The position numbers and the translations under genes are program-made. From positions 1 to 64,000 of the forward strand of contig CDMY01000308.1 in NCBI GenBank assembly GCA_001179505.1: a DNA stretch of 64,000 nucleotides, written 5' to 3'. Source of the stretch: Vitrella brassicaformis CCMP3155. Taxonomy: Eukaryota > Protista > Chromerida. The notes under the pieces are model-generated. The model did no database searches, was not told the origin of the DNA, and worked only from the letters and a program-made list of their open reading frames with translations. Below are positions 10,444 through 19,730 of this stretch, one piece after another; the stretch's first letter is position 1; each line of letters begins with the position of its first letter.

Positions 10444-12302
10444 TCAGTTAATGCCAAGCGACACCCACTGGCCCCCCTCGTCGATGCGGCCCAGCTGCTG
10501 CCACCCACCAAACTCACAGTCGTCATTGCCCAGATGAGTGTTGAAGCCCTTGTCGATGGCCCCCTCCTCTATGCCGTGTCGGGCCGCCTCGTCCAGCTGG
10601 GCCCTGTGGACCACCTCACGCAGCCCCAGCCGCCTGTGGCCACCATAATGCCCTCCGTTGACAGCGAAGCACTGCAGCGGCACCCGCACCATCTGGCCGC
10701 CCATATTGGCCATGCCGCCCACCACCTCCCTGTTGCTGCTGGCCTCGAACACAGCCGACTTGACAAAGTGCTCCGCTGCTGCCGTTACGCGACGGGCGAG
10801 TGTGCTGTTGCGGATGCCAATGCTGCCGCTGATGGCCTCACTGGCAGCGTCTTGGTCGAAGCACATGGCGGCGATCTTCCAGCCGATGGCCTCTGCCTCG
10901 TGTGGGCCATAGCCAGGGGGGGCGGGGAGGAGGGGGGCGGCGGGCGGATTGGCAGGAGTGGTGCCAGTGTGAGGGGGCTGCAGCAGGTGGGGCAGGAGGG
11001 CGGGCAGGGACTTCATGAGGAACGCCGCGAGGCCACGTTGAGGCCGCATGGCGGCATTCACCGCTGCAATCGTCGTAGTGGGCAGCTCGTTGAGCACTGT
11101 TGTGTACTGGGGCAGCACCAGCTGACGGCATTGACGCTCCTTGTCGGTGGCTGTGGGCATGCGGTCGATGTCCGCCCCGCTTCTCAGGAGTGTGCGGATG
11201 ACCGCCTCGTAGAGGGGAATCTCGCTGGTGGCTGTGTCCCTGGTGAGCTGAGGCATGGTGTCATCTTGGGAGGCCTGAACCGCCCAATCGAGCCCTGAGC
11301 CGGCGAAGACGAGCGGCGTCTTATTGGGGTCAAGCGGCATTCCTTTGTTGATCTCCGCTGGTGGCGCGTGGCGGCACAGGAAGTCGGCAACGCAGGGAGA
11401 GGGGACCCGTGCCGCCAGGTGCAGGGGCGTCCATCCGTGGCGGCCTTGTGCGGTTAGGCTGGCGCCATTGGCCACCAGCAGGTCCAGGTAGGCATCAACG
11501 AAGGCCTGGGAATATTGCCCCATCTCGCGGCAGGCCGCGTCGTGCACCAGATTGCAGCCGAGGCCGTCACCTCCTTGTTCCGTTGCGAGTGTGGCGTCGT
11601 TCTGGATGAGCCGCCGATAGATCGATAACAGCCGCCGCTCGTAGTCGAGGGGCACCCGACGGCCAATTCGGGCGGCAATGGCATCGGGCAGCGACATGAC
11701 GAAGCTATCGAAGTCGTCGACTTCTTGGCGGACAGCAGCGCCGCGCGCCAACAGGACACTGACGGCCTCATCATTGCCTCCACAGATCGCCACCCTCATC
11801 GGCCTTGAGGCAGCGTCGACCGCCAAGCCGATGTCGGCGCCGCCATCGATCTGTGACATCACAGACACAGACAACACTGGATGGGCGTCTGTAAGGTCGT
11901 GAGTCTCTGGTATCTGCTGACCAGGGCGTTGATGATGGCCGCTTCCAACTGGCGGGACGGCCATTGGGGAAGACTGATTGGATGAGCACGCCATTCGTTG
12001 TCAATCGCCCAGCGGGACGTCATGGCGATGCCGCTTAAATCATCGATAGCCAGCGACAGCAGCCGATACGCCATCCCACGTGAACAGCCCCGCGCCCGCA
12101 GCCCTGGAAGACTTTTCGCGTCGGCCCCATCGTGCTGAATCAGCTGTTTCACTTCCTGCTCGTCAGCGAAGGCCCGACAGATGATGCCGCCGCCCAGCCT
12201 TCTCGTGGCCTCGCTGGTGCCCGGGGCGTACATGACGTCAACGTCCTCCAGACGGTACCCGGTGGCATCAGGCCGCCGCTGGCCTTGTGCACCGGCAGCC
12301 AT
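10444..12302 (-). CDS. Ankyrin-repeat protein of a lineage-expanded family (paralogue 1)
   Basis: ATG 12302 (MAAGAQGQ). One intron at ~11852-11924 joins NAL|IDGGADI. Ankyrin repeats include GWTPLHLAA, TPLVFAG and LLRSGADID. The conserved C-terminus RLGLREVVHRAQLDEAA...WQQLGRIDEGGQWVSLGIN* is shared with the paralogue at 52689. Confidence 0.85.
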
Positions 12303-17056: not shown

Positions 17057-18054
17057 GTGACGGAGGCAGTGTGTGGAGCGGTAGACGGTGGCTGGGCGTG
17101 CTGGGCGCCATTGGTTCATCGATGGTGCGTGTTGTGTTGCGCGTCCATGTGTTTTGTGTCTGTGTGCATACAGACTTTTCCTGATCCATGTGATATATCG
17201 TCTTCTATGGATTGACCGCCATACTCAGACACAGTGAGTCAGTCGGTCAGTACGCCCTCGACGCGTCCACAAGCCGTGTCCGTCGAATGCCGCCAAATAC
17301 AAAACTGAGACACATGCTGACGAATCGGTCACCATATCGATGTGGTCGCGCGCGGCATCAGGACAATGGGCGATTGGATTGGATTGACAATCGAAGCGCG
17401 TCATTTACTTGATCCATGTAATATGCATGTCTCCCCCCCCCCCCCACACACACTCGATTGCTCCCCACCCAGCACGGAAGTGTCTGAACCGAACTACGCC
17501 CCCATCGACTCAGAAGAAAGAAAAGCTGCCTGCCGTCAGAAGCCCCGACAAAACAAAAACAAGACAGTGCAGGTAGGTGGTGAGTCGCATCTTGAGGCGT
17601 ATGGATGCGTTGCCGCCCACACACCTCCACGCACACATGGCATGCAGGTCCACAGAATAGAACCCCCCTGTCCCTGTCTGTTTCCGCATCTGTCTGTCTG
17701 TCTGTCTGTCGTCGTTCCCCCCGAGAAGTCTCTTGCTTACTCGGTCCCCACTGTATGTGTGTGTATGCACCGGATGCCGACGACGTCCGTCCCCTGCCCG
17801 AGCGGGGGGAGTGAAAAAATACAGCAAATAGAAAGTGGGGAGGGGGTGTAAGCAGCATTCAGTCAGTCTGTCTGTCTGTCTGTCTTGGCCTTTATCCCTC
17901 GCCCTCTTGGGTCTTCCCTATGAACGTATGAATGTATGCAAACCCGTCGCCTTCCCATACACACAGGTCAGTCTGTCAGCACAAATACACATCGCACGAT
18001 ATCCCCTCCCGCTTCACTCACTCACGAGCTGCAGGACTTGTGCTTCAATCACAA

Positions 18055-18979
18055 TCACGGAGCCCTCAGTCCCCTGCTCCTCGTCGCAGCTTCTTCCAGC
18101 GCTTCGACCTTCTTGATGAGCTCCTGGATCACGCTGAGCTGCGTGTAGAGGAGCTGCGTCATGTCCACAGCCGGCCGCTCATCCGGCTCGCCCTCGCTCT
18201 CTGCCTCCCCTGAAGCGACCTCGATGGAGCTGACCATGTTGGGTGCCACCTGCCCGTTCGCACACACACACAGACACACACAGACATATGTCGCGCGCAC
18301 ATAAGCTCCATCGACATGTGCTGAACGACACACACATCCGTCGAAGCACCTGCTTCACATCCGCGGCCGACAGACCCAAGACCCGCCCGGCGCTCTTGAT
18401 CTCCAGCCTCTTGATCAACTCAATGGCTGCCGACCGCTGGCCGGCGTCCTGCGCTGACATGTCCGCAGATTCGCTCGTCTCGATGTGGTACGTCCCCGCG
18501 ACCATGGATCTGCTGTGAGTGGTATCGCCGCAAGTGCACCTTTTTTCCGCAAAAACATGACCAGCGTACAGGCCATTTTCTACGAGACAATTGTCAGCCG
18601 CCATCAGGTCATCTGCACACATCACACAACATTCAGTGGACAGACGCAGACAGCAACAGACGACGGCAACGCCCGCCGCGCAGCATGGCTATTGATGATA
18701 GGATCAGGGCCCACTCACTCACCCCTGGCACAGATGTCGCCGCTTTTGATCGAATGCCCCGAATGGCAATATTCGCCGATGGAATCGGCCTTCAAGGACT
18801 GTAAGTAAGGCCAAGGAAACAAACGCACTGCCGCTGAATGAGCGAGAACAGCACAGCGATCTCACCTGGATGGACCCCTCGACTTGGAGGTCTTTGTCAA
18901 TAATTTGAGCTGGAGCTGAGTGAACGCCCGAGAAGGTGATAGCAAGGACGGCGACGAACACTCCCAAAGAAAGCGTCAT
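18055..18979 (-). CDS. Secreted protein with short beta-repeat-like N-terminal part and a peptidase-S74/intramolecular-chaperone-like C-terminal domain
   Basis: Four exons (18979-18866, 18798-18723, ~18612-18350, 18249-18055) splice in frame. Signal peptide MTLSLGVFVAVLAITFSGVHSA. C-terminus reads AIELIKRLEIK...GLSAADVKQ|VAPNMV...VDMTQLLYTQLSVIQELIKKVEALEE. Confidence 0.6.
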
Positions 18980-19365
18980 GGTGGAGTGGAAGGCGACGGC
19001 GACAAGAAAGCTGTTGGCGCAGCGAGTGAGAATGGGGGGCAAGTGGAGGGGAGGGGAGGATGGAGGGGGAGGATGGACGGATGGATCTGTGGTTGGATCT
19101 GGGCGGCTCCGCCGCTGAAGCCTTTTAGCGCTAACGCTAAAGAGTGTACGCGGTGGGAGGTTCGTAAATTAACGCTAAGAGAACGAGGAGAGAGGTTAGT
19201 GGAGAGAGAGGTTAGTGGCCACTCACTGCATGATACGCAAATGCATGCATGGCTGGTGGTGGTGGGTTTTGACGCCGTCCATTAGCAGTAGCTGAAGCAT
19301 GCACACACAGACCCCCCGGTTTGTGAGCCACACACCACAGGCTCACTCATCGGTCGTCTGTGCAG

Positions 19366-19535
19366 CTCTTTGGCTGCCAGCCGTCGCCCGCATCGACACG
19401 TCGGAGCGTCCCGTGGGCGGCGAGGAGGGTGCGGCGAGATTCCCCGAGACAGTGAGGGTGGTGGAGCAGGTGATGGGGGACGACGCACAGGTGGTGTTCG
19501 GCGATGAGTTGGAGCTGTAGACTGACTGATCGGCT
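19366..19535 (+). pseudogene. Orphan 3'-terminal fragment of F-box-like family B
   Basis: Encodes TSERPVGGEEGAARFPETVRVVEQVMGDDAQVVFGDELEL*, closely matching the C-termini at 26.2-26.35 kb and 29.66-29.79 kb. It also shares the downstream GTAGACTGACTGATC with the 29.78-kb copy. Confidence 0.8.
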
Positions 19536-19590
19536 GGCTGGTGCATGTGTGCCCGAGTCTCTGTGTTTCTGTGTAAGCTCACCTGGTCTC

Positions 19591-19730
19591 TCTGCGCCAA
19601 CAGCTTTCTTGTCGCCGTCGCGTTCCACTCCACCATGACGCTTTCTTTGGGAGTGTTTGTCGCCGTCCTTGCCATCGCCTTCTCGGGCGTCCACTCAGCT
19701 CATATTATCAACGACAAGCTCCACACAGGC
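19591..19730 (+). pseudogene. Inverted duplicate of the 5' leader and exon 1 of the gene at 18055-18979
   Basis: CTGCGCCAACAGCTTTCTTGTCGCCGTCGC...ATGACGCTTTCTTTGGGAGTG... is nearly identical to the reverse complement of 18915-19024 and encodes MTLSLGVFVAVLAIAFSGVHSAHII. No downstream exons recognised. Confidence 0.8.

What the first reader, a model, noticed from the sequence alone, without database searches (positions are those of the whole stretch)
18055..18979. Secreted eukaryotic protein resembling a phage tail-fibre tip with a peptidase-S74-type chaperone domain
Seen: signal peptide, then short Gly/Cys/Asp-rich beta-like repeats (DLQVEGSIQ, IKSGDICARDDLMAADNCLVENGLYAG). The C-terminus fits the S74 pattern ALxxIxxL...GxxAQEVxxVxPxxV...VDYxxL...IQEL...LE (here AIELIKRL...GLSAADVKQVAPNMV...VDMTQLL...VIQELIKKVEALEE). 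The SDxRxK cleavage motif is not evident. Established: S74/ICA domains trimerise tailspikes and fibres and occur in MYRF. Inference: a domesticated, possibly non-cleaving trimeric fibre used as a surface, scale or adhesion protein.
Basis: partly seen in the sequence, partly recalled or inferred. Interest (0 to 1): 0.7.

Follow-up and report, generated by a model that had tools for sequence, protein, structure and literature searches.

The report
Algal secreted protein, dead phage-fibre cap
The alga Vitrella brassicaformis expresses a small spliced gene for a probably secreted protein whose tail is a distant relative of the three-chain "chaperone" cap of phage tail fibres that can probably no longer cut itself off; it is one of about 18 unstudied paralogues, so it is real but not unique.

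Summary
Window 18055-18979 (minus strand) is a four-exon gene of Vitrella brassicaformis. Spliced transcript contigs from four runs confirm all three introns. It encodes about 215 residues: a signal-peptide-like start, about 70 residues of Cys/Asp/Gly-rich short beta-type repeats, a CxC motif, and a C-terminal domain ending in a short coiled coil.

Pfam PF13884 does not detect that domain. It is nevertheless a divergent S74/ICA domain:
- A family profile searched against 1.84 billion proteins recovers Pfam-verified S74 proteins (13 of its 18 non-family hits).
- hhalign against verified S74 domains gives 99% probability.
- A model of the 75-84% identical paralogue P0013 has the four solved ICA domains as its top four matches among 48,161 PDB chains.

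The catalytic Ser is kept, but the Lys five residues later is Met. Self-cleavage is therefore probably lost, and the cap probably stays on as a permanent trimer clamp. That step is inferred, not shown.

The gene belongs to a family of about 18 loci. This subfamily evolves at dN/dS of about 1.1-1.3. UniRef already labels the closest paralogue "Peptidase S74 domain-containing". This scan has found the same family before on other DNA of this genome. Trimer formation, location and function are untested. The joined spliced protein was not searched; the exons were searched separately.

The parts
18980..19093 (-). 5' untranslated region (minimum extent)
   Evidence: Transcript contigs reach 19091-19093 (table 8).
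18866..18979 (-). Exon 1 coding part, 38 codons: signal-peptide-like start and the first short repeat
   Evidence: Translation. The splice joint 18798>18866 is seen in four runs.
18799..18865 (-). Intron 1 (67 nt, GT..AG)
   Evidence: Sequence. The joint skipping 67 nt appears in X1, X2, X6 and X7.
18723..18798 (-). Exon 2 (25 codons plus 1 nt): Cys-containing short repeats
   Evidence: Translation; splice joints.
18613..18722 (-). Intron 2 (110 nt, GT..AG)
   Evidence: The joint 18612>18723 skipping 110 nt appears in four runs.
18350..18612 (-). Exon 3: last repeats, CxC motif, and the first half of the ICA-like domain
   Evidence: Translation. It aligns to family A in alignment A1. The A1 profile scores it at 59.6 bits.
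18530..18538 (-). C-T-C motif just before the ICA-like domain (about residues 89-91)
   Evidence: A CxC motif stands at this column in 11 of 14 family members (alignment printed).
18458..18475 (-). Relic of the cleavage motif, S-E-S-A-D-M: Ser kept, Lys position is Met
   Evidence: MAFFT and hhalign put this stretch in the SD...K columns of verified S74 domains. The ranges of the structural matches agree.
18250..18349 (-). Intron 3 (100 nt, GT..AG), which splits the ICA-like domain
   Evidence: One transcript contig lies on 18161-18246 and continues at 18347-18449. This gives the same mRNA as the canonical GT..AG cut.
18058..18249 (-). Exon 4 coding part (64 codons): acidic linker, second half of the ICA-like domain, short coiled coil, and the C-terminal G-L-R-A-P
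   Evidence: Translation. It is the only hit of the verified-S74 profile in the window, at 34.8 bits. The A1 profile scores it at 69.9 bits.
18055..18057 (-). Stop codon TGA
17892..18054 (-). 3' untranslated region (minimum extent; contigs continue to at least 17700 across a skipped repeat)
   Evidence: Contig 17892-18107 is present in all four runs.
19588..19701 (+). Inverted 114-nt copy (95%) of the gene's 5' UTR and signal-peptide codons. No further exons follow it, so it is probably a dead fragment.
   Evidence: the repeat finder pair I1. tblastn finds only exon 1 duplicated. The segment occurs three times in the genome.

Best explanation
This is an ordinary nuclear gene of Vitrella brassicaformis. 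It encodes a small protein (about 215 residues) that enters the secretory pathway.

Its layout is:
- a signal peptide;
- about ten degenerate six-residue beta-type repeats containing five cysteines;
- a CxC motif;
- a divergent intramolecular-chaperone (ICA / Peptidase S74-type) domain;
- a short amphipathic helix and a C-terminal G-L-R-A-P.

Shown: the gene is spliced and expressed. The C-terminal domain is homologous to S74/ICA domains and, in a close paralogue, models with that fold. The catalytic lysine is missing.

Inferred: as in phage fibres and MYRF, three copies of the ICA-like domain and its terminal helix associate and bring the upstream repeats together. Because the Ser-Lys dyad is broken, the cap is not cut off and stays on as a permanent trimer clamp. 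The CxC cysteines may lock this further. The result would be a short extracellular fibre or adhesin. The subfamily's high rate of amino-acid change fits a surface or recognition protein, or relaxed constraint after a recent duplication.
For: - Gene model and expression.
- Organism.
- Family of about 18 loci sharing the domain.
- The A1 family profile gives 34 hits at E<1e-3 among 1.84 billion proteins. Of the 18 hits ranked below the clear family members, 13 carry Pfam PF13884 (best E 9.4e-26).
- The same profile hits the S74 site in nearly all nine Pfam-positive loci of this genome (best 23.7 bits). Its best non-self score in the 64-kb window is 10 bits.
- hhalign of family A against nine verified S74 domains gives probability 99.2-99.4%.
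- The verified-S74 profile hits only the window's exon 4.
- The AlphaFold model of paralogue P0013 has pLDDT 62-93 over its C-terminal 90 residues.
- An exhaustive structural search puts MyRF ICA 7dc3 (Z 5.8), endoNF ICA 3gw6 (5.2), T5 fibre ICA 4uw8 (4.5) and phi29 gp12 ICA 3gud (4.0) at ranks 1-4 of 48,161 chains.
- Foldseek's top three PDB matches are 7dc3 chains. The viral library returns tail-fibre and ICA proteins. All four rows of the ESM Atlas search carry PF13884.
- The Lys is absent at the aligned position.
- In MyRF, S587A or K592A abolishes cleavage, and the C-terminal coiled coil is the main driver of trimerisation (PMC8326128).
Against: - Pfam PF13884 itself is negative, and a profile search of PDB sequences found nothing.
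- Structural Z-scores are modest (4-6) and Foldseek E-values are weak.
- The model is of a paralogue, not of the window protein, because the joined exons were not submitted.
- No trimer prediction was possible.
- The N-terminal 90 residues of the model have pLDDT below 50.
- Eight of the nine 'verified S74' sequences used were themselves picked by the family profile, so those tests are partly circular.
- dN/dS of about 1.1-1.3 is also what a gene drifting without function would show.
- Secretion rests on inspection of the N-terminus only.
Confidence: 0.6

Rival explanations
1. The gene is a young duplicate losing its function. It is still transcribed and spliced, but the protein no longer matters to the cell.
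For: - dN/dS is 1.31 against the C91 paralogue (42 non-synonymous, 10 synonymous changes) and 1.07 against the environmental contig L036. Intron divergence (0-10%) is similar to dS.
- Other family pairs have dN/dS of 0.3-0.6.
- A dead inverted fragment of exon 1 lies 561 nt upstream.
Against: - All three copies keep open frames and GT..AG introns.
- All three indels against C91 are multiples of three, and none of 52 substitutions creates a stop. By my rough estimate the joint chance of this is about 0.003.
- The family's core motifs are kept.
- Spliced transcripts are found in four runs.
Confidence: 0.15
2. The cap is still self-cleaving, using the retained serine with another base. It would then be released after folding, as in phage fibres.
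For: - The Ser aligned with the S74 nucleophile is kept in the window gene, in C91 and in L036.
- A His lies four residues upstream in these three copies.
Against: - The Lys position is Met.
- Across family A the Ser is kept in only about 5 of 13 members and the Lys in none.
- K592A alone abolishes MyRF cleavage (PMC8326128).
- The family-specific motif at the very C-terminus (G-L-M-A-P, found 8 times and only in this family) suggests that the C-terminal part has a role in the mature protein.
Confidence: 0.1
3. It is a fibre gene of an endogenous virus (a polinton-like virus or giant-virus insert), not a host gene.
For: - S74-capped fibre proteins are reported as ubiquitous in polinton-like viruses integrated in protist genomes (PMC12220804).
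- The structural matches are mostly viral.
Against: - The gene has three spliceosomal introns, a signal peptide and stable expression.
- About 18 copies are dispersed over 16 contigs.
- Long open frames within 10 kb give only an ankyrin repeat and no viral hallmark.
- Other parts of the window were noted as ordinary spliced algal genes.
Confidence: 0.05
4. The resemblance to S74 is chance similarity of a helix-rich, coiled-coil C-terminus.
For: - Pfam is negative.
- Z-scores under 8 can arise from common helical arrangements (note).
Against: - Four independent ICA structures take ranks 1-4 of 48,161 chains, each over 78-98 residues. The coiled-coil-only matches below them cover 35-60 residues.
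- 13 of 18 profile hits are Pfam S74.
- The hhalign alignment covers helix 1, the G-L..A.EV..FP..V strand-helix unit and the ID..QL strand, not only the coiled coil.
Confidence: 0.03

Closest known systems
C-terminal intramolecular chaperone domain of phage endosialidase endoNF (PDB 3gw6) and of phage T5 L-shaped tail fibre pb1 (4uw8) and phi29 gp12 (3gud); Pfam PF13884 / MEROPS S74
   Same: - It sits at the C-terminus after a beta-rich repeat region.
- It has the same order of elements: helix, beta-hairpin, G-L..AxEV..xP..V unit, ID..QL strand, long terminal helix.
- These structures are ranks 2-4 of the exhaustive structural search.
   Different: - The catalytic Lys is missing, so release of the cap is unlikely.
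- An acidic linker is inserted inside the domain.
- The host is a eukaryotic nuclear gene with introns and a signal peptide.
- There is no enzymatic or receptor-binding head.
- It scores below the Pfam threshold.
MyRF / MYRF ICA domain (PDB 7dc3)
   Same: - It is the best structural match (Z 5.8, 98 residues).
- It is a eukaryotic cellular protein.
- A terminal coiled coil follows the domain; in MyRF this coiled coil drives trimerisation (PMC8326128).
   Different: - MYRF has an Ndt80-type DNA-binding domain before the ICA domain and a transmembrane segment after it. It also has an intact Ser-Lys dyad that releases a transcription factor.
- None of these is present here (sequence).
Canonical S74 proteins of Vitrella itself (for example P0019 = CEM34855.1; loci C484, C185, C55, C592)
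   Same: - They are in the same genome and contain introns, and P0019 has a signal-peptide-like start.
- They are the nearest non-family hits of the family profile.
   Different: They pass Pfam PF13884 (P0019: 57.5 bits) and keep SD...K. The window's family does neither.
S74-capped fibre proteins of polinton-like viruses in protist genomes (PMC12220804)
   Same: The S74 cap sits at the C-terminus of repeat-built fibres, encoded in protist DNA.
   Different: Those proteins are large and modular (up to 3.9 k residues), sit inside viral elements, and are presumed to self-cleave. This one has 215 residues, is spliced, and lies among host genes.

Membership tests
Peptidase S74 / ICA domain (Pfam PF13884, MEROPS S74) | Match to the Pfam PF13884 profile above its gathering score | tested here: not met
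   No hit at E<=10 for the four exons, at E<=10 for four unspliced paralogues, or at E<=1 for P0013. The positive control P0019 scores 57.5 bits.
Peptidase S74 / ICA domain (Pfam PF13884, MEROPS S74) | Detectable sequence homology to verified S74 domains | tested here: met
   13 of the 18 non-family hits of the family profile carry PF13884. hhalign gives 99.2-99.4%. The verified-S74 profile hits the window's exon 4 at 34.8 bits, against a next-best of 4.5.
Peptidase S74 / ICA domain (Pfam PF13884, MEROPS S74) | ICA fold | tested here: met
   Tested on the model of paralogue P0013, not on the window protein. 7dc3, 3gw6, 4uw8 and 3gud are ranks 1-4 of 48,161 chains, with Z 5.8-4.0. All Atlas rows carry PF13884. 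The Z-scores are modest.
Peptidase S74 / ICA domain (Pfam PF13884, MEROPS S74) | Catalytic Ser-Lys dyad (S-D-x-x-x-K) | tested here: not met
   The aligned stretch is S-E-S-A-D-M. The Ser is present and the Lys is replaced by Met. No family-A member has the Lys.
Peptidase S74 / ICA domain (Pfam PF13884, MEROPS S74) | Self-cleavage of the cap after trimer assembly | not testable with these tools
   This needs protein expression and mass spectrometry. It is predicted absent from the missing Lys (PMC8326128: K592A is not cleaved).
Peptidase S74 / ICA domain (Pfam PF13884, MEROPS S74) | Homotrimer | not testable with these tools
   Only monomer prediction is offered.
MYRF-type membrane-bound transcription factor | Ndt80-type DNA-binding domain upstream of the ICA domain and a transmembrane segment downstream of it | tested here: not met
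   No Pfam domain is found on any exon. The protein ends about 30 residues after the ID..QL strand with a polar tail.
Viral (phage or polinton-like virus) structural fibre gene | Location inside a viral element, with no spliceosomal introns | tested here: not met
   Three confirmed introns. The neighbouring open frames lack viral hallmarks.
Single-chain hexapeptide beta-solenoid (left-handed beta-helix or bactofilin-like) for the N-terminal repeats | Regular six-residue repeats that fold as a one-chain triangular beta-helix | tested here: inconclusive
   The long paralogue P0003 models as a solenoid with pLDDT 81-94 and strands every six residues. Foldseek matches to left-handed beta-helix proteins are weak (E 0.09-1). 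The window-type short N-terminus has pLDDT below 50.

The most novel reading that the evidence does not exclude
A virus-derived fibre cap has been turned into a catalytically dead, permanent trimer clamp in a family of secreted mini-fibres found so far only in the Vitrella lineage. The smallest subfamily (this gene, C91 and an environmental relative) would be under diversifying selection because it takes part in recognition at the cell surface. Examples would be binding or blocking of viruses or bacteria, or attachment within the coral habitat.
Probability: 0.12. Interest if true: 0.7.

Novelty: new variant of a known kind. Interest (0 to 1): 0.38.

Why it matters
Outside MYRF, cellular eukaryotic uses of the phage fibre cap are hardly studied. 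A family that keeps the fold but has lost the cutting lysine would show that the domain can serve as a stable trimerisation module rather than a disposable chaperone. It would also provide a natural set of non-cleaving variants for studying how cleavage is coupled to assembly.

For chromerid biology, these could be candidate extracellular or cell-wall proteins in a close photosynthetic relative of apicomplexan parasites.

The gene itself is one member among many, and its closest paralogue already carries an automatic database label. The value therefore lies in the family, not in this locus.

Tried and rejected
- Pfam on the four exons, on four unspliced paralogues and on ten family proteins gave no PF13884 hit.
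- A family-profile search of PDB sequences gave only a chance hit at E 1.5.
- Foldseek of the whole P0013 model against the PDB ranked the right family first but at a non-significant E of 1.5. The exhaustive aligner and the viral and Atlas libraries were needed.
- A second gene copy behind the inverted exon-1 duplicate was sought with tblastn and not found.
- Viral hallmark genes were sought in ten long neighbouring open frames; only an ankyrin repeat was found.
- Literature searches for Vitrella plus S74, for S74 plus chromerids or alveolates, and for PF13884 found no paper on these proteins.
- The second structure job (P0003 with 13 sequences) gave a poor model of the cap (pLDDT 30-44), so it says nothing about that domain.
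- The spliced protein was never joined. The exons were searched one by one by reference, and the stored paralogue P0013 served as a proxy.

Full report
**Organism and locus**

The window is contig C308 of a 72.7-Mb, 1064-contig assembly. Database names for identical paralogues identify it as Vitrella brassicaformis CCMP3155, a coral-associated chromerid alga. The finding's coordinates match a coding sequence on the minus strand, from the ATG at 18979 to the TGA at 18057-18055.

**Gene model**

Reading the minus strand gives four exons, all with GT..AG introns:
- Exon 1: 18979-18866.
- Exon 2: 18798-18723.
- Exon 3: 18612-18350.
- Exon 4: 18249-18058.

Contigs from four public runs (three studies) were laid on 17700-19400. 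They show joints 18798>18866 and 18612>18723. One contig runs 18161-18246 and continues at 18347-18449, which gives the same mRNA as the canonical intron 18250-18349. The untranslated regions reach at least 19093 and 17892. The gene is therefore real, spliced as read, and expressed.

The annotated protein of the closest paralogue on contig C91 (P0013, CEL92567.1, 201 residues) has the same four-exon layout. Exon by exon it is 75-84% identical to the window gene.

Each exon was searched by reference, and P0013 served as a stored proxy for folding.

**Anatomy**

By arithmetic the product has about 215 residues. It contains, in order:
- a hydrophobic N-terminus ending V-H-S|A, which looks like a signal peptide (by inspection only);
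- about 70 residues with 5 Cys, 8 Asp and 7 Gly, which can be read as about ten degenerate six-residue units;
- a C-T-C motif;
- the domain in question, split by intron 3;
- an acidic linker;
- an amphipathic helix and a C-terminal G-L-R-A-P.

**A gene family**

Six-frame searches of the genome found about 18 loci on 16 contigs with the same C-terminal domain. Full-length members (P0001-P0004, P0008, P0011) share this layout:
- a signal peptide;
- a cysteine loop;
- a variable run of six-residue repeats;
- a CxC motif;
- the domain, with an acidic insert;
- a coiled coil of variable length (up to about 200 residues);
- usually the very C-terminal motif G-L-M-A-P.

That motif followed by a stop codon occurs eight times in the genome, always in this family, and never in the reversed control.

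The search of 1.84 billion proteins found family members only in Vitrella and in a few metagenome contigs. One of these, L036, is 85.5% identical to the window locus in DNA, introns included.

**Is the domain S74/ICA?**

A canonical Vitrella protein, P0019, scores 57.5 bits as a positive control. A family-profile search of PDB sequences also found nothing.

1. The genome holds at least eight Pfam-positive S74 loci elsewhere. The family profile A1 hits nearly all of them at the S74 site (best 23.7 and 23.1 bits). Its best non-self score in the whole 64-kb window is 10 bits.
2. Against 1.84 billion proteins, A1 gives 34 hits at E<1e-3. Of the 18 that rank below the clear family members, 13 carry PF13884, with a best E of 9.4e-26.
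3. hhalign of 14 family members against nine verified S74 domains gives 99.2% (local) and 99.4% (global) probability. The alignment covers helix 1, the G-L..A.EV..FP..V unit, the ID..QL strand and the terminal helix.
4. A profile of those nine verified domains hits only the window's exon 4 among 1532 open frames (34.8 bits against 4.5). Eight of the nine were themselves found with A1, so tests 3 and 4 are partly circular. All nine contain the S-D-x-x-x-K cleavage motif; only P0019 was confirmed Pfam-positive one by one.
5. Structure:
   - The AlphaFold model of P0013 is confident only in its C-terminal 90 residues (pLDDT 62-93; helix, hairpin, helix, long helix).
   - An exhaustive alignment to 48,161 PDB representatives ranks MyRF ICA (7dc3, Z 5.8, 98 residues), endoNF ICA (3gw6, 5.2), T5 fibre ICA (4uw8, 4.5) and phi29 gp12 ICA (3gud, 4.0) first to fourth. 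Short coiled-coil matches follow.
   - Foldseek's top three PDB rows are 7dc3 chains, though at E 1.5.
   - The viral library returns tail-fibre, ICA and endosialidase-chaperone proteins with probabilities up to 0.99.
   - All four rows of the Atlas search carry PF13884.

Each score is modest, but together they are not chance. UniRef already names P0013, P0003 and P0004 'Peptidase S74 domain-containing protein'.

**The cleavage site**

In MAFFT and hhalign alignments, the S-D of the S74 motif falls on an x-D column of the family. In the window gene this column reads T-S-E. The ranges of the structural matches agree with this placement.

The window gene, C91 and L036 keep the Ser. Five residues later, where S74 has the Lys, they have Met. 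No family member has the Lys, and only about 5 of 13 keep the Ser.

In MyRF, S587A or K592A abolishes cleavage. These residues correspond to S911 and K916 of endoNF. The C-terminal triple coiled coil is the main driver of trimerisation (PMC8326128).

I therefore infer that the cap is not released and acts as a permanent trimerisation module. That is an inference. Neither the trimer nor the lack of cleavage could be tested here.

**The N-terminal repeats**

In the long paralogue P0003 the repeats model as a single-chain beta-solenoid, with strands every six residues and pLDDT 81-94. Foldseek matches to left-handed beta-helix proteins are weak, and there are sub-threshold Pfam hints to beta-solenoid families. 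This differs from the three-chain beta-helix of phage stalks.

The window-type N-terminus is too short and too poorly modelled (pLDDT below 50) to decide. There is no separate 'tip' domain.

**Rate of change**

| Comparison | Non-synonymous / synonymous changes | dN | dS | dN/dS |
|---|---|---|---|---|
| Window vs C91 | 42 / 10 | 0.098 | 0.075 | 1.31 |
| Window vs L036 | 26.5 / 7.5 | 0.060 | 0.056 | 1.07 |

Intron divergence (0-10%) is close to dS. Other family pairs give dN/dS of 0.3-0.6 over the domain.

The open frame, the splice sites and three in-frame indels are kept. The subfamily is therefore either under diversifying selection or only weakly constrained. The data cannot separate the two.

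**Host gene or virus?**

S74-capped fibres are reported as ubiquitous in polinton-like viruses integrated in protist genomes (PMC12220804). Several points argue against a viral element at this locus:
- three confirmed introns;
- a signal peptide;
- dispersed paralogues;
- neighbours without viral hallmarks;
- ordinary spliced algal genes elsewhere in the window.

An ancient viral or bacterial origin of the domain remains likely. The nearest canonical relatives of the family profile are Vitrella's own S74 proteins.

**Earlier notes of this scan**

After my own analysis I looked up earlier notes. Several paralogues on other contigs of this genome had already been followed up, with the same reading: a secreted fibre with a dead phage-type cap and a lost lysine. 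My results agree with them. I count more loci (about 18).

**Verdict**

The gene is a new member of an unpublished family, found so far only in the Vitrella lineage, that is a non-cleaving variant of a known domain type. Function, location and oligomeric state remain to be shown.

Noticed in passing
window 18913-19026 and 19588-19701: This is a 114-nt inverted repeat (95% complementary, arms 561 nt apart). It duplicates the gene's 5' UTR and first 22 codons. The second arm continues as a decayed exon-1 reading frame, but no further exons follow. The segment occurs three times in the genome; the third copy is the start of the C91 paralogue.
   Followed up: partly
genome-wide: C91, C219, C220, C347 (two loci), C477, C637, C1000: The C-terminal motif G-L-M-A-P followed by a stop codon occurs eight times, only in this family, and never in the reversed control. 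The window gene has G-L-R-A-P. It may be a sorting, processing or binding signal.
   Followed up: partly
G000:C1000:94740-94757: A G-L-M-A-P-stop lies downstream of the annotated end of P0003. The database model of that paralogue may therefore lack a last exon.
   Followed up: no
L036 (ENA assembly ERZ893784, contig k147_1637048, 2215 nt): This metagenome contig is 85.5% identical to the window locus, introns included. It points to a second Vitrella-like strain or species in an environmental sample. Its gene caller read through intron 3 (P0014).
   Followed up: partly
P0003 residues 60-160 (paralogue on C1000): The six-residue repeats model with high confidence (pLDDT 81-94) as a one-chain beta-solenoid. 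This would be unusual upstream of a trimerising phage-type cap.
   Followed up: partly
window 18127, 18128, 18139: Three linked base differences (G>C, A>G, C>G) appear in a 113-nt transcript contig of runs X6 and X7, but not in X1 or X2. This could be an allele, a strain difference or a paralogue's transcript.
   Followed up: no
G000: C484, C185, C332, C429, C55, C592, C436, C204: At least eight further loci pass Pfam PF13884, and several keep the SD...K motif. The genome thus holds both live and dead versions of the cap.
   Followed up: partly
window 10444-11994 (minus): A long open frame with an ankyrin repeat is the only Pfam hit among ten long frames within about 10 kb of the gene.
   Followed up: no
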